Assembly (NCBI GenBank): GCA_048013815.1
Contig: CM106586.1
Coordinates: forward strand, 8,928,001-8,992,000
Reading direction: 5' to 3'
Length of the DNA: 64,000 nucleotides
DNA from: Setoptus koraiensis
Lineage: Eukaryota > Animalia > Arthropoda
A program made the position numbers and the translations under genes. Below, one piece after another: positions 4,705 to 25,440 of this stretch. The notes below the pieces were generated by a model. The model ran no database searches, was not told the origin of the DNA, and saw only the letters and a list, made by a program, of their open reading frames with translations. The stretch's first letter is position 1. The number at the start of each line of letters is the position of its first letter.

Positions 4705-7526
4705 GTAATATCACAGCGACCGGCCAATGATTTGGCCGGCAACCTGTTGCACTTGTTGCCGATACTGGATGACAGCAAACAGTGTGTGTGTGTGTTTGTT
4801 TTAATGTGATCTTGTTTCATTTATCTCGGCATGCGCATCGCCTTGCCGGTCAGTCTCGCAAGTCAGTCTCGCGAGTCAGTCAGTTGCTGGTTTCGGTTAG
4901 TTTCCGACGGTTCCGACGGTTCAGTCGGGTTCAAGTGGCCCAACCGAGAGTCGCAAACACCGCCGGCCGATACAATGTGTGCCATCGCATTGAATGCCAT
5001 CGCATGACATGAATCGCCGAGCTCGAGTGAACAGTCTCAGCCGGCCCATTTAAACTTAATTTATTGGCATTGTTTTACAGCCCCAAACGCAAATTAATGA
5101 CGGCCTTCCCCATCACTCGCCTATTGCACTATTGCGTAATATTATATTGTGTATATTGTTGCGTCACAACTATTGACTGTTGAGCAAAAATAACTATCGG
5201 CAATTATCTACTAACGAGTTGATGCGGTGCCAGTAGTGTGTGTGTCACAAGCCGTAGCGACGCTAGAAATTTCTCTCGCGCTCTGACAGCGCGAGACAAA
5301 GACATTACCTGTGCTCGACATTGGCCATAAATCAACCAACTGTCGCATCTCACACACAACGACAATCTTAATGACAATCTCGCTACAACCCGATATAAGC
5401 GGCAATCTTGATAGTGATGTAATACAATTATATCGCCATTAGCTCTTGGCTGCGTGTGACCGCCGATTTGGTGCAACGACAACGTTTTGTCTCGCTCGCC
5501 CGCTCATCGTTTATCCGTTTATTTACATTTTGTATTTGTGTGTGTGCATGGGCTGGCCGCGAGTGTCAAGCGAAAGTTTTTATTTTAGCCGACAATGACC
5601 AGCGACGATAAGCGAGCAGTGGCAAGGTAGTAACGGTCGCCCCATAACGGTAAATGTGTAAACGCGATGCCGTAAATGACGGCGCTCGTCTTGGCGCTTG
5701 CTCTCGTTTGTGCCGCGTCGCGCTTGACAGTTGCAGCTAGCCAGTTGCTGGCTGCAACAAAAATATTATTATCCTTATCGATTCCTTATCGGCCATCCGA
5801 GGGTCGTTGCGCAACAAGCAACAAGCAGCCAGCAGCCAGCAGCAAACGACAAACGGCCAATGACAAACAACCGCCGGCCGCTTGCACTTGCCCGATGGCT
5901 GGCTCACCTGAGAAAGTCGTTCCACTCTCATTGTGCACTTGTTAGCTCGCTCTCATTAGCGAGCTAACAATTATTGGCTGTCGCTCTCTTATTGGCTCTC
6001 ATTAGCTGGCTTGCTTGTTAGCGAGTCGAATTGTGCGCAACAGCAACGGCAGCAACAGCAACAACAACCGCCGCCACCACGTTGCCAGTCGACTGTTTCG
6101 TTTGACGCTTAATTTGTGAAAATTAGAATATCCATCATTGGCGAAAATCATTTTATAATATCATCATCTTATCCGCTTGTTTGCTGTCAACCTGTCGGCC
6201 GACAGCTGACGCAAGTCACCCAGTCAGCTGTTACCATGAGTTTGTTTAGTGACACACCGTGTCAGCTAACTCACCTGGTGACCAGGTGACTCACCTGATA
6301 GTCTTATTGTGAGGTGGGCAGTTCATGAGACGAGCACGTTAAACTGTTCAGTTGACTGTGCCAAGTCAATCTAATTTGACCATTGATTGATCGTCACGTA
6401 CAAGTTCATTTTTATTTTTATCTATCGTTTGTTTGTCTTGCTCGCCTTTGCACTTGTTCGCCAGTTGGACACTTGTTAGCCCAATGACCGTCGTTGTTTT
6501 TTTTTTGTTTCACGACAAAGACACGACGAGCCGATTGTTTCAGCGAGCCGCCGCCGCCGACAAACTCGTCGGCTGTGAGCGCTCTCTAACAAAATGGTAA
6601 ATGTTTTTATCTCTGGCAGACATTAGCGCACTTGACTCTTCTGCCTGATATGCCTGATGGACAACAAACTGACTGACGATAATACGCTTACCTAATAACA
6701 ATTGTAGTTACGCAATCAAAATAATGTTGCCAAAATAATTAAGCTCGCCATCGTTAGCACTAGGTGCTGCCGCTGCTATTGTAGCAACAATGCCAAATCA
6801 ATGTGATATCAACCTTCTCGGCTCATCTGTCAGCCCAACAGAAGGTCATCTGACACTGCAAGTCATCGCACTAGATCTGCATTCAACAAGTTTCGTTTCA
6901 CAATGCTAGCTGACGTAATTGTGAAACAAAATCGAAAAACAAACAATTTAGCCAGTTGATTATTTTTATCATTTTTTATTTACTGAACGCACACAAACAG
7001 CGAGATTGGTTAGATAGCTAAAAATGCACTTTTATCGTTAATGACACCAACTTGAGTGAAGTGAGCAATTCGCAAAGTGCTGATAAATGAAACAAATGAT
7101 CATCATTTAATGATGTCATGATTCGAAATCTAACCATCCGAACACAGTTACAACAAACACGATGAATGCAATCTGATGAATTAGGTGTCATCTTGCGATA
7201 TTTCGGGCGCCCAACAAGGTAGTGCTAACAACCTTTTGGTCGGTGTTGTGTCAAGTAATTTATCCCTCTCGCCGCAAATAGACTGAGCTTGCCTTTCAAT
7301 CGTCAAATCGATTTCGGCGTGTATGTGTGTCAGAGGCGTCGTGACAACACAGTTAGAAAACAATTATCCCCATTCCGTCTCACACCGTGTGTCCTCTTGA
7401 AACTGTGCTGCAACCATTGTCCACAGTTCACAACTCACAATTATCCTCGGTTGCACCCACACCCGTTATGCGGCACGATCGATATTGGCTGCAGGCCACA
7501 GAAAACAGAAAAAAAGAGTTTGGCAA

Positions 7527-12941: not shown

Positions 12942-14555
12942 ATGTTCAAGGTGAGTGCCCAGCCCAACACGCCGCTGCCCAGTCGGCATGTATCGCTGCC
13001 CAGTTGGCATGTATCAGCGCCCCAATTTACTGACCGTTTACCTCTGCTCGTTACTTTTACCCTATCTAGCAAATAATCCTAATAGCCCTCGTGGTGGCCG
13101 GTGCCGCGGCTCTACAGGAAGAGGCCGCCCCGGAGCCCTACAGCTTCCAGTACGACGCCGACTCCCACTCGGCCGCAGAGAGCAAGGACGCCAACGGAAA
13201 GGTCACTGGTTATTACACGATAGGTAATTATCCGTTTATGTTTTTGTTTGCCCGTTGACACAAGACTGTCACGTGCATGCCATACTCACTAACTGTCATC
13301 TCACTAACTGTCATCTCACCAACTGACAACTGATAAATTTGCCAATCCAACGCCAACCCAAAACCGGCCATCAGCTGAGGCTGACGGCAGACAACGCCGC
13401 GTAGACTACGAGGCCGATGCCGCTGGCTTCCGTGCCAAGGTTCAAACCAACGAAGTCGGAACCAAATCAGACAATTCGGCCGATGTCGAGGTTCTAGCAT
13501 CGCCCCCAACGCGAGAGCAATTAGTTCAACAGGTCAGTGGCGCTCAACAATACTCTCAACAGCAACAACAATTCGCGCAACGGGTTGCCGGTCAACAACA
13601 AGTGCAAAGGGCCTACTCGCAACAAGTGTCCGCGGCGGCGCCCCTCCAGCGAGCCGTCTACGGTAGCTACCAGTCGACCGCCAGCGCCGTACCCGCCCAA
13701 TCATCGTACAGCAGCTACCAGTCGACCGCTAGCGCCGCACCCGCCCAATCAGCTTACGGTAGCTACCAGTCGACCGCCAGCGCCGTACCCGCTCAATCAT
13801 CGTACGGCAGCTACCAGTCGACCGCCAGCGCTACCGCTGTACCCGCACAATCATCTTACGGAAGTTACCAATCGACAGCCAGTGCCGTACCCGCCCAAGC
13901 AGCTTATGGCAGCTACCAATCGACGGCCGGCGCCGTACCTGTCCAAGCAGCGTACGGTAGCTACCAGTCGACCGCTACCGCAGTACCCGCACAATCGTCT
14001 TACGGAAGCTACCAAGCGACCGCTACCGCTGTACCAGCATCGGCCCAATACGCTAGCTCGGTGTACGGATATTATCCAGTCAGCAGCGGAGCCTATGATA
14101 CCGCTTACACCCTAGGCAATGCCAACAACAATGCCGCTTACTATGCCTACAGCGTAAATCCTGGATATGCCGCAAACTACAAAACTGTCGCCTATACAAA
14201 CGAGGCCGCAGTACCCATCCAAGCCGCCGCTGTACCGGCCACCATCCAATATACCATCAAAAAGGTTCAAACTTCCGCCGTACCTGTCGTACCTGTTGTG
14301 TCTGTTGCACCCGTTGCAACAACATCCACAAGTCGCAATCTTTACCGCACAGTTACCGGCTACCAAGCAGCGGCCGTGCCGGTGAGCGTCGGACAGTACA
14401 GTAGCGGATATCAAATTGCTGTACCCCAACAGCAGACAGCTTCGTACCAATACGTGCAACCTGCCACCACCACTGGATCTTCTTATTATTCATCGTCCTC
14501 ATCATCGAAAGTTGAACAACCACAACAAGTAACATCATCGCTCGTCTACAACTAA
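12942..14555 (+). CDS. Cuticle protein with Rebers-Riddiford chitin-binding domain (CPR family) and Tyr/Ser/Ala repeats
   Basis: Exons 12942-12950 (MFK, then GTGAGT), 13070-13223 and 13375-14555, phase-consistent. Signal peptide MFKQIILIALVVAGAAA; R&R motif PYSFQYD...ESKDANGKVTGYYTIAEADGRQRRVDYEADAAGFRAKVQTNEVGT. Confidence 0.93.
12974..13015. repeat. 21-bp tandem x2 in cuticle gene intron 1
   Basis: GCTGCCCAGTYGGCATGTATC twice. Confidence 0.9.
13285..13330. repeat. 15-bp tandem x3 in cuticle gene intron 2
   Basis: CTCACTAACTGTCAT x2 plus a degenerate third unit. Confidence 0.9.
13659..14048 (+). repeat. Coding 48-bp tandem repeat, 8 units (YGSYQSTASAVPAQSS)
   Basis: Read directly in the DNA and the translation; unit 4 has a 2-residue insertion. 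Confidence 0.95.
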
Positions 14556-20401: not shown

Positions 20402-22396
20402 ATGCCTGCATTTTCAAATAAGAAAAAGAAAGAGCAGTTACGTCTCAAGAGGCTATTGAAACGTGAACGTAATGATGATCCAAGTAGCTTTTATAAATCT
20501 ATATCGCAAAAGTCACATTTCAAAGGCAAACAGAATGGTAACAACGATAATCGCAATGGAGGACCTGACAAAAGGAAAGAACGCTTCGCTGATTTACAAT
20601 TCTTTAAGGATGATGATGAAGAAATCAAATTGCGCAAAGAACAGTCCATGCTACCGATAACCAGGTTAGAGGAAAGTCATCTTGAAGTTGATGCTCAATG
20701 CCCAGCAGCTAGTCTAGATATGCCTAAGAGGCCACCATGGAATAAAACAATGTCAGTCAAACAATTGGACGAGCAAGAACAAAGGCATTTCAAACAATTC
20801 ACGAATGATCTCCTATCACAATCGGACGAATCAGAAAAGAAGCTTAGCTATTTCGATCTCAATCTCGATACATGGCGTCAGTTGTGGAGAGTGATTGAAA
20901 TGAGTGAGATTGTTACTATTATTGTTGATATTAGACATCCATTGTTTCATTTTCCACCTACACTCTACAATTACATTGTGAATGATTTGAAAAAGATGGT
21001 CATTATTGTTTTGAACAAGATAGATTTAGTACCAGCATCGCTCGTGGTTGCTTGGATGGATTATCTCAACAAACAATATCCCGAGGTCCATATCATACCT
21101 TTTGCTTCATATGCTGGAATGAAATCAAAGAAAGATGGTAGGCGCGTAGGTAAGCTTCATATGGCCACAGATGGAGCTAGAAGATTCATGTTGGAGGTTG
21201 AAAAAATGGTTGGTCACTTTGTAGACCTGACAACCTGGAAAGAGAAGATTCAAGAAGAATTGAAAACCAACGGAAAGCCGATCAACTTATATCATGATCA
21301 AGTTGGTGGAGATGAGGATCATCCATCTGAACACAGTGGAGACAATCTTTCGGATCAAGATGATAGCGCTTCAGTTTCCTCTCATCATAGTGAAAATGCA
21401 TGTGTAAATGAAGATGAAAATGAACAGGATTGTTCTGACGAAGATGTCATACCTGAAGCTGATTCAGACCACGAGGCAGGGGATTCCGAGCATGATGCTG
21501 TTGTTGACAGATCGTCTTTGAAGCAACAAGCCTTCAAGAAGAACCATAATTTCTACAGGGATCATCGTGGCCAAAATAAGCATGATTATGATAGTCATAT
21601 GGAGCGTCAAGCAGTTAGCAGGGAGGAAGTAGTAGATAGTGATGACAGTGACGACGCAAATGCAGGTCGAAGAGCTTTACGTCAAGCCAGACAGATAAGT
21701 ACAAAGAATGATGCGACTTACTACAACGAGGAGAAATTCAAGAATGGATTGTTGACAATTGGTTGTGTGGGTCATCCGAATGTTGGAAAGTCCTCATTTA
21801 TGAATGCGCTTATTGGCAAGAAAGTAGTATCTGTGTCCAGAACACCAGGACATACCAAACATTTCCAGACTATTTTCTTGACACCGAATGTTCGTTTGTG
21901 TGATTGTCCCGGTCTTGTATTCCCGTCTTACTATCCGAAACAACTTCAAGTCATCATGGGATGCTATCCGATATCACAATTAAGAGAGCCTTACAGTTCT
22001 ATTCAATATATTGCCGAGCGTTTAAACTTGCCAGAGATACTAAAATTGAAACCCATCGATGAGATCAGGCATCATCTGGAAGGAAGACAGAACTTAAGTA
22101 AAGCACAGCAGCAACAGATAAAAGACGACATTGAGTGGTCGGCATACTCGATTTGCGAATCATGGGCCATGATCCGAGGATTTTTGACCGCCAGGTCTGG
22201 TCGTCCCGATGTTTACCGCGCAGCAAATCATTTGTTGAGGATGGCTTTAGATGGTAGGACGATCTGTCTGACATTTTACCCACCGGATTACTTCAAGTTG
22301 AAAGAGAGCCACTGGGAGCTTCACGAAGATACCGCTCGTATTCAATCTATTCAGGGAAGACATAATATCATAGACGAAGAAGAGGAAGACTATTGA
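20402..22396 (+). CDS. GNL1: Guanine nucleotide-binding protein-like 1 (circularly permuted MMR1/HSR1 GTPase), intronless
   Basis: N-terminal FSNKKKKEQL, LDTWRQLWRVIEMSE, DIRHP, G4 LNKIDL, G1 GHPNVGKSS, VSRTPGHTKHFQT, G3 DCPG, GRPDVYRAANHLLRMALDG. Confidence 0.95.
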   Translation: MPAFSNKKKKEQLRLKRLLKRERNDDPSSFYKSISQKSHFKGKQNGNNDNRNGGPDKRKERFADLQFFKDDDEEIKLRKEQSMLPITRLEESHLEVDAQCPAASLDMPKRPPWNKTMSVKQLDEQEQRHFKQFTNDLLSQSDESEKKLSYFDLNLDTWRQLWRVIEMSEIVTIIVDIRHPLFHFPPTLYNYIVNDLKKMVIIVLNKIDLVPASLVVAWMDYLNKQYPEVHIIPFASYAGMKSKKDGRRVGKLHMATDGARRFMLEVEKMVGHFVDLTTWKEKIQEELKTNGKPINLYHDQVGGDEDHPSEHSGDNLSDQDDSASVSSHHSENACVNEDENEQDCSDEDVIPEADSDHEAGDSEHDAVVDRSSLKQQAFKKNHNFYRDHRGQNKHDYDSHMERQAVSREEVVDSDDSDDANAGRRALRQARQISTKNDATYYNEEKFKNGLLTIGCVGHPNVGKSSFMNALIGKKVVSVSRTPGHTKHFQTIFLTPNVRLCDCPGLVFPSYYPKQLQVIMGCYPISQLREPYSSIQYIAERLNLPEILKLKPIDEIRHHLEGRQNLSKAQQQQIKDDIEWSAYSICESWAMIRGFLTARSGRPDVYRAANHLLRMALDGRTICLTFYPPDYFKLKESHWELHEDTARIQSIQGRHNIIDEEEEDY

Positions 22397-22539
22397 TCTT
22401 CACCTGATCGTTCAAACGTTTCAAATAAACACAATTTCGTCAAATTTTCTGTTCGTTGAAGAGAAGTTACTATTCAGATTGTTCACTGTCTTAATAATGA
22501 TACCGTAGCTCTAATGATATTTTGTCCTTGAGATAATCG
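22278..22539 (+). repeat. Direct repeat copy 1: GNL1 3' end, shared 3' UTR and last codons of the TIR gene
   Basis: Near-identical to 25180-25440 over about 260 bp by direct reading. Confidence 0.95.
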
Positions 22540-24514
22540 GCCATCTGAATTTCGGCGTTTTAATTTTCGGACTTATGATTCCGGCGTTCTGATCATCCGG
22601 CCTTTCAGCAGCTGCCCGAGAATTATCTTTTCTGCCTGCATCAACATATTCCATTGAAGAATCTCCCAGCTTTTTTATATCAAATGATTCGGCGATTCTT
22701 AAATTGTTTTTAATCATAACAGCAACTTCAGATATACACTCTTGTGGCCAATGAAGAGCTCCGTCGCCTTTTGAAGTATCACCATTTGAATATGATTCTC
22801 CGTTGGGTTTCCAGCAGATATACTGTGTTGTTGCAAATTGTATAGCCAAACAAGGTGGTGGCCAGATTTGACAAAAATTCACTGGAATTATGTGTTTTTT
22901 AAGCACATCTGCAAGTTTGATTTCTCTGTTCGACCACAATGTCTGTCCATAGGATGATGTCACTAAAGGTACAAATACGGAACAGCCACATATTGCATCG
23001 TTCAATGAATCTTGCCAATCTGATCCACTTTTGATTTCATGAATATCCAAATAAACAGTTAGTCCCAACTTTTCGAGAGCTATTTTTAGATCGAGGGCAT
23101 GAACTGCTGCCTCACGCCGCACATAGGAGATCATCACTTGTTTATCGATGCTTTTATCGCTGGTGCAAGTCGTGGTACTCTCCTCTTCTTGTCTCACTTC
23201 AACATCCTTGATCTCTTGTTTATATTCCGTATCAGTTTTGCTTATTTGCCCTGATTGATCTATGTCGATCGATAGCTTCAGTGAGTCAACAGCTAGACTT
23301 TCATTTTTTAACGAAAGATTCTTGAATTTCCAATTTCTTCTTTCTTTCAATGTGTCCTTTGATCCAAGTATTAATGGTGAATTGCTAGCCTGCGTTTTGT
23401 AGCCTGATGTGTCATTATTCAAAACTTCAACTGATGCGTCACTTTTAGTTGTATTCTCTCCGTTAGGTATAACAAGACTGGACTTTCCAAGCCCGACATA
23501 CACCGTGGTGTCGGCTAGCGAACCACTCTTGATGGCTACGGTTTGATTCTTGCCTACAATAGTGATAATTGCGATGGATGATTCTTGCTGGGGTGTTATG
23601 GGCCAAAAGCGTTCATCCAAGAATATGAAATTTTTCAGTCTGGAGTATAGATTTCCACCGTCATCTATTATACTTGTCAAATGTTTGAAGTGCGTGTCGA
23701 TTTCTTGACGCAAATCAGATAGGCAATCTTCTTTATTACAAATTATCGAGCCGAGGCACACTCCCGCACCCGTGCATTCAACTATTCCAATTTTCAATTT
23801 TGGATCGGAGCTTTGAATAAAAACGGAACCTTCGTCCTTTCTTGAGCCATGCCAACTTATCAAATCACACGCTGTCTTGTATTCCTCTTGATTTCTGGGA
23901 GAATATGTAATAATATCACTATCTATTTGTAAAAAAGTGAAATCTTCAGGCAAATAGAGCACATTTTTTAATATGAGAGTTCTTAAATTCGACAATGTCG
24001 TGTTAATCATATCGATTTTTACAAATCCCAATACTGTATGTTGGTCCGGCATCCTTTTGAATTTGTTTAGTAGTACTATAGAGATTTCCTTGACTAAGTT
24101 TCGGTTTTCTTTTGCTTCAAATGTGCACCTTGAGGTTTCATGGTTCATCTCAGTTGTAATCACAAAGTTGGTATCTATCAAACGATGGTCTGTTAATGGT
24201 CTGCGACCGACATAACAAGTTTGCGTTTCGAATTGATTAGTTTTTTTTAATTCATGCTCAGCAGAATATGTTTCATCTTCCCCTATAATCATCGTATTGT
24301 TTGCTTGGGAGGGCGATGAAACCCGGGCTGGCATACCCGGGCCCATTGAATGCTCTCTCTTACCTTCATCAGTCGGGTCTTTTTCTTCAATCGATGACGA
24401 GCATTTACTTGTGGACGCAATAACGATAGTTTTGCTTTCTGATCTATGCTTAAATGGGCCATAATTGAGTTCTATCTCCTCGTATTGATTTTGTGTCGTA
24501 CTCCAATTATTCAT
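22511..24514 (-). CDS. TIR (TIR_2-type) domain protein with two upstream SPATA1-N-like modules; start uncertain
   Basis: Long intronless ORF (first ATG 24514, frame open to 24586). C-terminal VMISYVRRE..LDLKIALEKLGLTVYLDIHEIKSGSDWQDSLNDAI..CSVFVPLVTSSYGQTLWSNREIKLAD..KHIIPV is a TIR_2 pattern. Two internal modules share LG.....LS.LR..I...F.FL...P..QE. Confidence 0.88.
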   Translation of the reverse strand: MNNWSTTQNQYEEIELNYGPFKHRSESKTIVIASTSKCSSSIEEKDPTDEGKREHSMGPGMPARVSSPSQANNTMIIGEDETYSAEHELKKTNQFETQTCYVGRRPLTDHRLIDTNFVITTEMNHETSRCTFEAKENRNLVKEISIVLLNKFKRMPDQHTVLGFVKIDMINTTLSNLRTLILKNVLYLPEDFTFLQIDSDIITYSPRNQEEYKTACDLISWHGSRKDEGSVFIQSSDPKLKIGIVECTGAGVCLGSIICNKEDCLSDLRQEIDTHFKHLTSIIDDGGNLYSRLKNFIFLDERFWPITPQQESSIAIITIVGKNQTVAIKSGSLADTTVYVGLGKSSLVIPNGENTTKSDASVEVLNNDTSGYKTQASNSPLILGSKDTLKERRNWKFKNLSLKNESLAVDSLKLSIDIDQSGQISKTDTEYKQEIKDVEVRQEEESTTTCTSDKSIDKQVMISYVRREAAVHALDLKIALEKLGLTVYLDIHEIKSGSDWQDSLNDAICGCSVFVPLVTSSYGQTLWSNREIKLADVLKKHIIPVNFCQIWPPPCLAIQFATTQYICWKPNGESYSNGDTSKGDGALHWPQECISEVAVMIKNNLRIAESFDIKKLGDSSMEYVDAGRKDNSRAAAERPDDQNAGIISPKIKTPKFRWPIISRTKYH

Positions 24515-25179
24515 CAGGTCATTATGTGGATAGACCAGTTGGCTTAGCCGGAAGCGATTTGTTGCATAATGAGTCGCATGTAGCAACGACCAATAAGAAA
24601 AAGAGCGAGCCAGAATGTATATGTCTTTAAATCAAGTATACACTATCGACAATGTTACCCGAATAGCTTGAGATTGCACCACAAAGTAGGTTTTAGTTGG
24701 TTAATCCTAACCAACTTGGTTAACTTAATCCTAAATTATAAGGCGTTGAGCTTATTTTCCACTACGAGAACGCGTTTTTATTACATTCGAGAATGATGAG
24801 ACAGAAGAAATTGAAATAGAGTTTTCATCAGCACAAAAGTCATGAGCATGTAACTACCTAGTGTACCTACCTTAATGGGAATAGTTCACATTAGACGATA
24901 GATTAATATCATTATCAATAGATAAAATCAATCAGAGAGCCAGCGATAACAAATTGTTTATGTAACCTTGCGGGCCATTGCAAAGTTAATTTCTATAGGT
25001 AAATGCCGAACACAAAATTTAAACACATCGAAAAATATAAATAGGACGGTATCTATATAACAGCATATAGAAAGATTGGTTCCATTCCACGAATACCGCT
25101 CATAAACAAATACAGTATCAAGATGCCTTAGCAAATCCTCGATATAAGTTTTTCTTGTTTCTTAATAAAGTACTCATAC

Positions 25180-25440
25180 ACCCACCGGATTACTTCAAGT
25201 TGAAAGATAGCCACTGGGAGCTTCGCGAAGATACCGCTCGTATTCAATCTATTCAGGGAAGACATAATATCATAGACGAAGAAGAGTAAGACTATTGATC
25301 TTCACCTGATCGTTCAAACGTTTCAAATAAACACAATTTCGTCAAATTTTCTGTTTGTAGAAAAAAGTTACTGTTCAGATTGTATGGCTCTTCACTGTCT
25401 TAATAGTGATACAGTAGCCCAGCACTTTTTGAGATAATCG
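25180..25440 (+). pseudogene. Direct repeat copy 2: duplicated, degenerate GNL1 3' fragment
   Basis: Copy of 22278-22539 with substitutions and small indels; GAG GAA GAC is changed to GAG TAA GAC (nonsense), and there is no 5' portion. Confidence 0.9.

What the first reader, a model, noticed from the sequence alone, without database searches (positions are those of the whole stretch)
22511..24514. Non-Toll TIR protein with tandem SPATA1-N-like modules and a retained NADase-type glutamate
Seen: a cytoplasmic protein (no signal peptide, LRR, TM or ARM/SAM) with two related modules (LGFVKIDMINTTLSNLRTLI..DFTFL..PRNQE and LGSIICNKEDCLSDLRQEI..NFIFL..PQQE), an acidic linker and a C-terminal TIR_2 domain. 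Its WSNREI Glu (codon 22924-22922) sits where SARM1 has WVHKEI. Established: that Glu is catalytic in the NAD+-cleaving TIRs of SARM1, plant TNLs and bacterial Thoeris. Inference: this could be an uncharacterised animal TIR NADase or signalling enzyme controlled by ubiquitin-like sensor modules. The SPATA1 resemblance is from memory of the SPATA1 N-terminus.
Basis: partly seen in the sequence, partly recalled or inferred. Interest (0 to 1): 0.72.

Follow-up and report, generated by a model that had tools for sequence, protein, structure and literature searches.

The report
Truncated mite TIR signalling-enzyme gene
This mite gene encodes only the front half (two ubiquitin-like modules plus an enzyme-type TIR domain) of a widespread invertebrate TIR-TIR-SLOG protein whose starfish counterpart was recently shown to make the signalling nucleotide cADPR; the family is therefore already known, and the unusual point is that this copy lacks its back half and sits between two copies of a neighbour gene's end.

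Summary
Window 22511-24514 (minus strand) is an intact 667-codon ORF. It has no signal peptide or membrane segment, two homologous N-terminal modules and a TIR_2 domain. Glu531 (codon 22924-22922) aligns with SARM1 E642.

Its TIR is 55-70% identical to one conserved family found in mites, spiders, ticks, horseshoe crabs, molluscs, echinoderms, hemichordates, nemerteans and Trichoplax. That family's architecture is two ubiquitin-like (UBL) modules, TIR1, TIR2 and a SLOG domain.

The isolated TIR1 of the starfish member (Patiria miniata A0A914B4U3, catalytic E327 in WTNRE) made cADPR in E. coli (bioRxiv 10.64898/2026.04.20.719644, Table S4). The paper says such activity was lost in all catalytic-Glu mutants.

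The modules are tandem ubiquitin-like folds and are conserved across the family. The SPATA1 link is only a weak fold-level lead.

New here: the mite copy stops about 25 residues into TIR2 and has no SLOG. The ORF ends 1 nt from the edge of a roughly 235-bp direct duplication of the neighbouring GTPase gene's 3' end. This indicates that a 2.67-kb gene fragment was inserted. Conservation suggests the fragment is still functional, but expression is untested.

The scan had already noted this duplication (s1-307652).

The parts
22511..24514 (-). Intact single-exon ORF of 667 aa (stop at 22511-22513): truncated UBL-UBL-TIR1 member of the metazoan TIR-TIR-SLOG family
24104..24514 (-). Poorly conserved N-terminal region, aa 1-137 (dN/dS 0.47 for aa 1-130 against the relative L001)
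23810..24103 (-). Ubiquitin-like (beta-grasp) module 1, aa 138-235
   Evidence: AlphaFold model, pLDDT 82.9. VIA: SHANK3 SPN Z 8.1, ubiquitin variant Z 8.1 with rmsd 2.6 over 76 residues. Conserved in 113 of 120 family members.
23507..23809 (-). Ubiquitin-like module 2, aa 236-336, homologous to module 1
   Evidence: hhalign module 1 vs module 2: probability 99.0%, E 6e-18. VIA: PI3K ABD Z 8.9, hHR23A UBL Z 8.3 with rmsd 2.3 over 74 of 77 residues, Dsk2 UBL Z 7.9.
23150..23506 (-). Linker, aa 337-455, mildly acidic at its end
   Evidence: dN/dS 0.31
22679..23149 (-). TIR1 domain, aa 456-612, SARM1-like and ThsB-like
   Evidence: Pfam TIR_2 E 2.7e-14. Model pLDDT 82.1. SARM1 TIR Z 15.1, rmsd 2.2 over 127 residues, 25% identity. 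PADLOC ThsB 1.6e-8. dN/dS 0.083.
22922..22924 (-). Codon GAA for Glu531, the catalytic-position glutamate in W-S-N-R-E
   Evidence: Aligned to SARM1 E642. Invariant in the 58-sequence family alignment A2. Equivalent to Patiria E327, listed as the catalytic residue in the preprint.
22514..22678 (-). C-terminal tail, aa 613-667. Its last part is the decayed remnant of the first ~25 residues of TIR2 (DDQNAGIISPKIK against HHQNDGLVANKIK in the relative).
22510..25179 (.). 2.67-kb segment lying between the two repeat copies: the TIR gene fragment plus about 665 bp of its upstream DNA. Homology to relative L001 is confined to this segment.
24515..25179 (-). Upstream non-coding part of the segment. 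24894-25064 is 73% identical to the upstream region of the relative's gene.
22278..22509 (+). Direct repeat copy A: last 40 codons and 3' UTR of the GTPase gene (the functional end of that gene)
25180..25418 (+). Direct repeat copy B: relic of the same GTPase 3' end, 222 of 240 aligned positions identical, with two indels and a premature stop
20402..22396 (+). Neighbouring intronless GNL1/LSG1-type GTPase gene (664 aa), convergent with the TIR ORF

Best explanation
**What it is.** The ORF is a naturally truncated copy of a conserved invertebrate gene. The full-length product is UBL-UBL-TIR1-TIR2-SLOG, in effect a Thoeris-like signal-making TIR and a nucleotide-binding SLOG in one chain. The mite copy keeps the two ubiquitin-like modules and TIR1 and ends about 25 residues into TIR2.

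**How it arose (inferred).** A 2.67-kb fragment, comprising the upstream region and the first two thirds of the gene, was inserted into the 3' end of the neighbouring GTPase gene. The insertion duplicated about 235 bp of the target.

**How it works.** One step is shown in an orthologue: the isolated TIR1 of the starfish family member converts NAD+ to cADPR in E. coli, and its listed catalytic residue is the Glu equivalent to E531. The remaining steps are inferred.
- The mite TIR1 keeps E531 and 61 of 64 highly conserved family positions, so it should have the same activity once its TIR domains self-associate.
- The tandem UBLs are probably docking or assembly modules.
- Without TIR2 and SLOG the protein would lack the family's presumed nucleotide-sensing and regulatory half. 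It would then act as a stand-alone signal generator or NAD+ consumer.
For: **Family membership**
- TIR region search: 55-70% identity across mites, spiders, ticks, horseshoe crabs, molluscs, echinoderms, hemichordates, nemerteans and Trichoplax. Many hits carry PF13676 plus PF18306.
- Pfam on full-length members shows two TIR_2 stretches or SLOG matches, or both.
- The N-terminal double module is present in 113 of 120 members.

**Catalysis**
- Preprint Table S4 row 129: Patiria A0A914B4U3, TIR 254-417, catalytic residue 327 (the E of WTNRE), scored active, cADPR produced. The text states that mutating the Glu abolished production in all cases.
- P0045 is the same starfish gene and is 65% identical to the window TIR.
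- W78, N80, R81 and E82 of alignment A2 are invariant.
- SARM1 is the best PDB match by sequence (3.6e-9). By structure it scores Z 15.1, rmsd 2.2.
- ThsB hit at 1.6e-8. The starfish protein also hits the ThsA SLOG (STALD) model.

**Truncation**
- The window protein is colinear with P0001 only up to its aa 687.
- A 477-column TIR2+SLOG profile finds the relative's gene (9e-54) but nothing in the 64-kb window.

**Insertion**
- Repeats at 22278-22509 and 25180-25418.
- The ORF stop lies 1 nt from the end of copy A.
- L001 homology is confined to the interval between the repeats.

**Constraint**
- dN/dS is 0.083 for TIR1 and 0.14 for the UBLs.
- There is no excess of window-specific changes at conserved sites: 5 against 2.
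- At the divergence seen in the flanking repeats, a neutral 2-kb ORF would probably be broken. P(open) is about 0.12 from substitutions and about 0.003 from indels as point estimates.
Against: - There is no expression evidence.
- The constraint argument since insertion rests on only about 10 substitutions and 2 indels in about 235 bp of flank, so it is weak. dN/dS against L001 (dS about 1.2) mostly reflects time before the insertion.
- Activity was shown for an isolated starfish TIR over-expressed in E. coli, in a preprint. It was not shown for this protein or in an animal.
- TIR2 may be needed in vivo as the partner that completes the active site.
- A full-length paralogue may exist elsewhere in this genome, making this copy redundant.
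- A residue-level structural superposition of E531 on E642 could not be produced with these tools. Only sequence and profile alignments plus domain-level superposition are available.
Confidence: 0.6

Rival explanations
1. It is a young, non-functional gene fragment. A partial duplicate of a full-length TIR-TIR-SLOG gene landed beside the GTPase gene and has not yet accumulated disabling mutations.
For: - The copy lacks two of the family's four conserved domains, and the ORF ends at the junction.
- The remnant of TIR2 has lost its first strand.
- There is no expression evidence.
- The flanking repeats are still 93% alike, so the event is recent relative to dS 1.2 against the nearest relative.
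Against: - 667 codons are open, with no frameshift or stop. The flanks show two indels in about 235 bp.
- 61 of 64 highly conserved TIR1 positions and 8 of 8 UBL positions are kept, the same as in the full-length relative.
- There is no rate acceleration.
- The segment carried about 665 bp of upstream DNA, part of it conserved with the relative.
- Another eriophyoid, Fragariocoptes, also has a UBL-UBL-TIR1 gene with no TIR2/SLOG within 10 kb. This suggests the short form can be viable.
Confidence: 0.27
2. It is an expressed protein that acts as a non-catalytic TIR adaptor or scaffold, or as a dominant-negative regulator of a full-length paralogue. It would work through TIR-TIR and UBL contacts, not as an enzyme.
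For: - Many animal TIRs with a Glu at this position showed no activity in assays (preprint Discussion).
- Structure alone does not separate it from adaptor TIRs: MyD88 Z 14.0, MAL 13.3, against SARM1 15.1.
- UBL domains are typical protein-protein interaction modules.
Against: - The orthologous starfish TIR is active.
- The W-x-N-R-E motif is invariant across phyla.
- The profile matches only enzymatic TIRs in the PDB (SARM1, TIR-1, bacterial TIRs) at E<0.01, and no TLR, MyD88 or IL-1R TIR.
Confidence: 0.1
3. It is an assembly or haplotype artefact. The juxtaposition of the TIR fragment with the GTPase 3' end would be a mis-join, and the real gene would be full length.
For: The independent read-level check could not be run.
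Against: - The two repeat copies differ by about 10 substitutions and two indels, so they are not a collapsed or duplicated read artefact.
- Eight runs from five studies hold the stretch or a part of it, six of them at least half of the sampled words.
- The tail after TIR1 has diverged from TIR2 in sequence, not just been cut.
Confidence: 0.03

Closest known systems
Patiria miniata TIR-SLOG protein A0A914B4U3 (= LOC119739902, P0045) and its invertebrate orthologues (bioRxiv 10.64898/2026.04.20.719644)
   Same: Same family by descent. The TIR1 is 65% identical, with the same T-x-W-[TS]-N-R-E-[VI]-K motif and catalytic Glu, and the same N-terminal tandem UBL modules.
   Different: The starfish and most other members continue with TIR2 and a SLOG domain. 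The mite copy ends about 25 residues into TIR2. The mite UBL region is longer (221 against about 148 residues) and divergent, at 20-31% identity.
SARM1 / C. elegans TIR-1 (NAD+ hydrolase)
   Same: SARM1 is the best solved-structure match by sequence (profile E 3.6e-9) and joint best by structure (Z 15.1, rmsd 2.2 A, 25% identity). W-x-x-x-E aligns with W638/E642.
   Different: There are no ARM or SAM domains. The N-terminus is tandem UBL instead. The preprint places the two in different TIR clusters. The starfish orthologue was scored for cADPR production, with no NAD+ depletion entry in its Table S4 row.
Bacterial Thoeris (ThsB TIR + ThsA SLOG)
   Same: The TIR hits the PADLOC ThsB model (1.6e-8). 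In full-length family members the C-terminal domain hits ThsA's STALD/SLOG model and Pfam LDcluster4/STALD. The family therefore looks like signal generator and receiver fused in one chain.
   Different: It is eukaryotic and fused in a single polypeptide, with no SIR2 or other recognisable effector. The mite copy retains only the ThsB-like half.
Tandem ubiquitin-like domains (USP7 HUBL, talin F0-F1, linear di-ubiquitin, ISG15, FAT10; single UBLs of hHR23A and Dsk2; PI3K ABD)
   Same: Each module superimposes on a whole UBL (74-76 residues at 2.3-2.8 A, Z 7.9-8.3). The pair matches tandem-UBL proteins (Foldseek probability 1.0, E 4e-7 to 5e-5).
   Different: There is no sequence-level similarity: Pfam and PDB profile searches are blank. 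There is no C-terminal di-glycine, so it is not a conjugatable modifier. Z around 8 is in the range where only the common fold is shown.
SPATA1
   Same: Two sets of SPATA1_C-containing clusters appear among the 30 nearest ESM Atlas models to the UBL pair (TM 0.40, 105-107 residues aligned, rmsd 3.4-3.5).
   Different: TM is below 0.5. There is no SPATA1_C domain. SPATA1 clusters were not among the rows shown by the feature-based search. No sequence comparison was possible.

Membership tests
Metazoan UBL-UBL-TIR-TIR-SLOG family (Patiria A0A914B4U3 type) | TIR1 with invariant W-x-N-R-E and the flanking family motifs | tested here: met
   61 of 64 positions conserved at >=90% are kept, and all 37 invariant columns of A2 are kept. 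55-70% identity across phyla.
Metazoan UBL-UBL-TIR-TIR-SLOG family (Patiria A0A914B4U3 type) | N-terminal pair of homologous ubiquitin-like modules | tested here: met
   A local profile finds the pair in 113 of 120 members, including P0001. The window keeps 8 of 8 conserved positions.
Metazoan UBL-UBL-TIR-TIR-SLOG family (Patiria A0A914B4U3 type) | Second TIR domain (non-Glu at the catalytic position) | tested here: not met
   Only a remnant of about 25 residues is present. The TIR2+SLOG profile finds nothing in the window.
Metazoan UBL-UBL-TIR-TIR-SLOG family (Patiria A0A914B4U3 type) | C-terminal SLOG domain (PF18306/PF18185) | tested here: not met
   There is no Pfam hit and no profile hit anywhere in the 64 kb. 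It is present in the relative L001.
SARM1 family | ARM + tandem SAM + TIR architecture | tested here: not met
   Pfam finds only TIR_2 at E<=1.
SARM1 family | Catalytic Glu on helix alpha-C in a W-x-x-x-E context | tested here: met
   HMMER alignments. E531 lies in predicted helix 77-88 of the model.
Catalytic (NAD+-processing) TIR domains | Measured NAD+ cleavage or cADPR production that is lost on Glu mutation | not testable with these tools
   Reported only for the starfish orthologue's isolated TIR, in a preprint.
TLR / IL-1R / MyD88-type signalling TIR proteins | LRR or Ig ectodomain with a TM segment, or a death domain | tested here: not met
   No TLR, MyD88 or IL-1R chain appears at E<0.01 with the family profile.
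SPATA1 | SPATA1_C domain (PF15743) | tested here: not met
   No hit at E<=1.
SPATA1 | Sequence homology of the N-terminal modules | not tested
   No SPATA1 sequence could be obtained by reference. The only evidence is a fold-level lead of TM 0.40.

The most novel reading that the evidence does not exclude
The UBL-UBL-TIR1 half is an autonomous signalling enzyme, and eriophyoid mites have freed it from its TIR2-SLOG half at least twice: here by a fragment insertion with a ~235-bp target duplication, and independently in Fragariocoptes. These would be natural separation-of-function alleles. They would show that the family's cADPR-type output does not need the in-cis SLOG, and that the tandem UBLs, not SLOG, couple the enzyme to its trigger.
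Probability: 0.3. Interest if true: 0.6.

Novelty: new variant of a known kind. Interest (0 to 1): 0.42.

Why it matters
Enzymatic TIR signalling in animals outside SARM1 has only just been proposed. The family this gene belongs to is among the most conserved non-Toll TIR proteins of invertebrates: its TIR1 is about 60% identical from Trichoplax to mites. It also looks like a fused Thoeris-type generator plus receiver. Its biology is nonetheless unknown, and the family-wide tandem UBL pair was not listed among the domains the preprint tabulated for the members seen here.

A naturally truncated copy that still looks constrained gives a concrete test of which domains are needed for activity and regulation. 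The ~235-bp flanking duplication is also a clean example of how a gene fragment with its promoter can be moved and become a shorter gene.

For genome annotation, the practical point is that this is a member of a known family, not a new orphan NADase.

Tried and rejected
1. **Whole-protein word search** and **exhaustive HMMER search of aa 100-400**. Both returned only P0001. The mite's N-terminal half is too divergent for single-sequence searches. The family link came from searching the TIR region alone and from local profiles.
2. **ESM Atlas feature searches**. All scores were below 0.9. Ubiquitin-type clusters appear only as leads, and SPATA1 clusters were not among the rows shown.
3. **Read-level check of the insertion and of expression.** Two local scripts did use the whole window only as a search target: six-frame scan with a protein profile; BLAST database.
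4. **Exact-sequence look-up** of the 667-aa product in public assemblies: not on record.
5. **Search for a full-length paralogue in this genome** through the scan's notes: nothing found, which is uninformative.
6. **Nucleotide alignment of the last 50 nt of the ORF to the relative's TIR2**: no convincing homology. Whether the terminal 15 codons are frameshifted TIR2 or filler is open.
7. **Transposon signature in the inserted segment.** There is no second copy in the window, and only short 11-12-nt inverted repeats, none at the segment's two ends. A transposon-mediated origin is unsupported.
8. **Bacterial-type promoter and terminator scan**: not meaningful for an animal gene.
9. **Module profile against PDB sequences**: only chance-level M-CSF hits.
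10. **TIR tree with SARM1, MyD88 and bacterial TIRs**: Profile-versus-PDB ranking and the preprint's clustering were used instead.
Full report
**1. What is in the sequence**

Window 22511-24514 holds, on the minus strand, an uninterrupted ORF of 667 codons (ATG at 24514, TAG at 22513-22511). An in-frame TTG at 24586 would add 24 residues. Pfam finds one significant domain, TIR_2 at aa 460-567 (E 2.7e-14), and nothing else credible at E<=1.

The N-terminus is hydrophilic, and the most hydrophobic 19-mer scores only 1.59 on the Kyte-Doolittle scale. The protein is therefore soluble and not secreted.

The neighbours are ordinary housekeeping genes: esterase D, a GNL1/LSG1-type GTPase, a proteasome alpha subunit, a CD39-type NTPDase, an FF-domain protein, a lipase and nanos. 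Earlier notes of the scan call the genome an eriophyoid mite. My closest annotated protein matches are indeed mites.

**2. The TIR domain and its glutamate**

- **Sequence.** phmmer against all PDB sequences gives SARM1's TIR as the only family with E<0.1, with WSNREI aligned to WVHKEI (E642). A profile of 58 family TIRs raises this to E 3.6e-9. C. elegans TIR-1 and two bacterial TIRs follow. No TLR, MyD88 or IL-1R TIR reaches E 0.01.
- **Structure.** An AlphaFold model built on that alignment (pLDDT 82.1) places E531 in the helix at model residues 77-88. The model superimposes on SARM1's TIR at Z 15.1, rmsd 2.2 A over 127 residues and 25% identity. Other TIRs (Hydra TRR-2, RUN1, SPARTA, AbTir) tie on Z, so the fold alone does not discriminate.
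- **Defence-system models.** PADLOC's ThsB (Thoeris TIR) model matches at 1.6e-8.

**3. It is a member of a large, conserved family**

Searching with the TIR region alone returned 152 proteins. The named ones among the 120 listed come from mites (Dermatophagoides, Sarcoptes, Oppia, Halotydeus, Leptotrombidium, Fragariocoptes), spiders, ticks, scorpions, horseshoe crabs and a pseudoscorpion. Others come from many molluscs, echinoderms, hemichordates, nemerteans and Trichoplax. All are 50-70% identical to the mite TIR, and many carry PF13676 plus PF18306 (SLOG cluster 4). No insect, crustacean, nematode or vertebrate appears among the named rows. This is suggestive of absence but not proof.

Pfam on full-length members shows two TIR_2 stretches, or a C-terminal SLOG (LDcluster4/STALD), or both. 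The starfish protein also hits PADLOC's ThsA SLOG model.

In the TIR1 alignment 37 columns are invariant, including W78, N80, R81 and E82 (E82 = E531). The motif T-[QL]-W-[TS]-N-R-E-[VI]-K is almost universal.

**4. The family's TIR1 has been assayed**

The source is the bioRxiv preprint 10.64898/2026.04.20.719644 (Hurieva et al., Sorek laboratory, 22 April 2026).

- **Catalogue (Table S2).** It lists the same architecture in Macrostomum (TIR1 Glu360, TIR2 His671, SLOG 757-955). For two tardigrades it lists a Glu-type TIR and a SLOG.
- **Assay (Table S4, row 129).** The entry is Patiria miniata A0A914B4U3, 857 aa, TIR 254-417, catalytic residue 327. It is scored active with cADPR produced at 4 h.
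- **Residue check.** Counting along the sequence given there, residue 327 is the E of WTNRE. P0045 in my set is the same gene (motif offset 19) and is 65% identical to the window TIR.
- **Mutants.** The text states that in all cases mutating the catalytic Glu abolished cADPR production.
- **Limits.** The authors stress that these are isolated domains over-expressed in E. coli. They do not discuss this family further.

[quoted passage not shown] I could not check which ecTIR-DC class this family is.

**5. The two N-terminal modules**

- **Family-wide conservation.** A local profile seeded from window aa 125-345 finds a roughly 148-residue double module at the N-terminus of 113 of 120 family members.
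- **Internal repeat.** Its two halves share the pattern LG-x-V...L-x-x-L-R...Q-L...F-x-F-L...G-W-P-I...Q-E. Profile-profile comparison of the halves gives probability 99.0% and E 6e-18. They are a tandem duplication.
- **Fold.** The AlphaFold model (pLDDT 82.9) shows two beta-beta-alpha-beta-beta units. Foldseek's top hits are tandem-UBL structures: talin F0-F1, USP7 HUBL, linear di-ubiquitin, ISG15 and FAT10 (probability 1.0, E 4e-7 to 5e-5).
- **Single-module superpositions.** Each module covers a whole UBL. Examples are hHR23A (Z 8.3, rmsd 2.3 over 74 of 77 residues), Dsk2 (Z 7.9), a ubiquitin variant (Z 8.1, rmsd 2.6 over 76) and the PI3K ABD (Z 8.9).
- **Sequence level.** There is no sequence-level match to any Pfam or PDB family.
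- **SPATA1.** SPATA1_C-containing clusters appear among the 30 nearest ESM Atlas models at TM 0.40, but not among the rows shown by the feature searches.

**6. This copy is truncated**

The nearest relative is P0001, from a Logan assembly (locus L001). It is 60% identical over the whole 667 residues, and 81% in the TIR. It continues for another 400 residues. The alignment ends at P0001 residue 687, about 25 residues into its second TIR (window DDQNAGIISPKIK against HHQNDGLVANKIK). The first strand of TIR2 (RRVAISH) is already replaced by AAAERPD in the window.

A 477-column profile of the family's TIR2+SLOG half gave these results:
- It finds L001's gene at 9e-54.
- It finds a further L001 ORF at 6085-6936 at 1.4e-14, which looks like a second exon.
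- It finds nothing in the 64-kb window.

The same is true of the Fragariocoptes setiger locus L002. There the modules and TIR1 lie at 13188-14407, with no TIR2 or SLOG within 10 kb downstream. Because the window copy still carries a TIR2 remnant and is colinear with L001's full-length gene, the two eriophyoid truncations look independent. This is an inference.

**7. How the truncation arose**

The ORF and about 665 bp upstream of it lie between two direct copies of the last 40 codons plus 3' UTR of the convergent GTPase gene. Copy A is at 22278-22509 and copy B at 25180-25418. They share 222 of 240 aligned positions, with a 1-nt and an 8-nt indel and a premature stop in copy B.

Copy A ends 1 nt before the ORF's stop codon. 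DNA and protein homology to L001 is confined to the interval between the copies (22559-25064, with a faint match to 25181), and L001 carries no GTPase sequence.

The simplest reading is insertion of a 2.67-kb gene fragment into the GTPase 3' end with a ~235-bp target duplication. I found no transposon signature. A dispersed duplication of the GTPase end is a less parsimonious alternative. It would require coincidence between three things: the repeat edge, the stop codon and the end of homology.

This duplication was already noted by the scan (s1-307652). I confirm it and refine its length.

**8. Is the short gene alive?**

- **For: domain constraint.** dN/dS against L001 is 0.083 in TIR1 and 0.14 in the UBLs, against 0.31-0.47 in the linkers.
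- **For: conserved sites.** 61 of 64 highly conserved TIR1 positions and 8 of 8 UBL positions are kept, the same count as in the full-length relative.
- **For: no acceleration.** Lineage-specific changes at conserved sites number 5 against 2 (not significant within either domain).
- **For: ORF survival.** At the divergence seen between the flanking repeats, a neutral 2-kb ORF would stay open with probability about 0.12 for substitutions and about 0.003 for indels (point estimates).
- **Against.** dS to L001 is about 1.2, so dN/dS mostly reflects the time before the insertion. The flank-based rates rest on very few events.

I put the odds of a functional gene at about two in three.

**9. Mechanism**

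- **Shown in an orthologue.** TIR1 makes cADPR from NAD+ in E. coli.
- **Inferred for TIR1.** The mite TIR1 should do the same once its TIR domains self-associate, as other enzymatic TIRs require (established for SARM1, plant and bacterial TIRs).
- **Inferred for TIR2 and SLOG.** In full-length proteins TIR2 has Gln or His at the aligned Glu position (7 family sequences aligned here; Macrostomum in the preprint). TIR2 and the ThsA-like SLOG probably provide partnering and nucleotide sensing.
- **Inferred for the UBLs.** The UBL pair probably docks the enzyme to a partner or scaffold.
- **Consequence for the mite protein.** It would be the signal-generating half alone.

**10. Verdict**

It is wrong about novelty and architecture.

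The protein is a truncated variant of a known, recently assayed family. What is new is the family-wide tandem-UBL module, which the preprint's tables did not list among domains for the members seen here, and this naturally shortened, apparently constrained copy with its clear insertion footprint.

Noticed in passing
L001:1618-4860 and L001:6085-6936: The relative's gene is split. P0001 (1080 aa) matches the family TIR2+SLOG profile only to column 335, and a separate downstream ORF matches columns 325-439 (E 1.4e-14). P0001's last ~40 residues are probably read-through into an intron of about 1.2 kb, and the true product is longer.
   Followed up: partly
L002:10001-14413 (Fragariocoptes setiger JAIFTH010000401.1): The annotated protein P0037 ('clathrin assembly protein LAP', 887 aa) is a chimeric gene model. 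It joins an ANTH/ENTH gene to a UBL-UBL-TIR1 gene (modules 13188-13649, TIR1 13822-14407 with one intron). No TIR2 or SLOG follows within 10 kb, so a second eriophyoid also has the short form.
   Followed up: partly
window 25155-25289 (+): There is a relic 44-codon ORF made from the duplicated GTPase 3' end (…PPDYFKLKDSHWELREDTARIQSIQGRHNIIDEEE*). It carries a premature stop relative to the functional copy.
   Followed up: yes
family TIR2 domains (e.g. P0086, P0071, P0081; P0001 aa ~780-800): When aligned to the TIR1 profile, TIR2 has F-C-E-Q-Q-V where TIR1 has W-T-N-R-E-V. That puts Gln at the catalytic position in the 7 sequences that aligned; by eye P0001's TIR2 has His there, as the preprint lists for Macrostomum. 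The second TIR is probably non-catalytic.
   Followed up: partly
P0045 aa 650-848: The starfish full-length protein hits PADLOC's ThsA STALD/SLOG model (E 9e-4) as well as ThsB with its TIR1. The animal family therefore resembles a fused Thoeris generator-receiver pair.
   Followed up: no
window 24690-24725: A short perfect hairpin (GTTGGTTAA-TCC-TAACCAAC type) lies in the upstream region of the TIR gene. Its function is unknown, and it is not repeated elsewhere in the window.
   Followed up: no
window 20402-22396 and 22511-24514: Both the 664-aa GTPase gene and the 667-aa TIR gene are single uninterrupted ORFs, and their ends are only 114 bp apart. The convergent transcripts probably overlap in their 3' UTRs. 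The GTPase's AATAAA lies inside repeat copy A.
   Followed up: no
   Followed up: no
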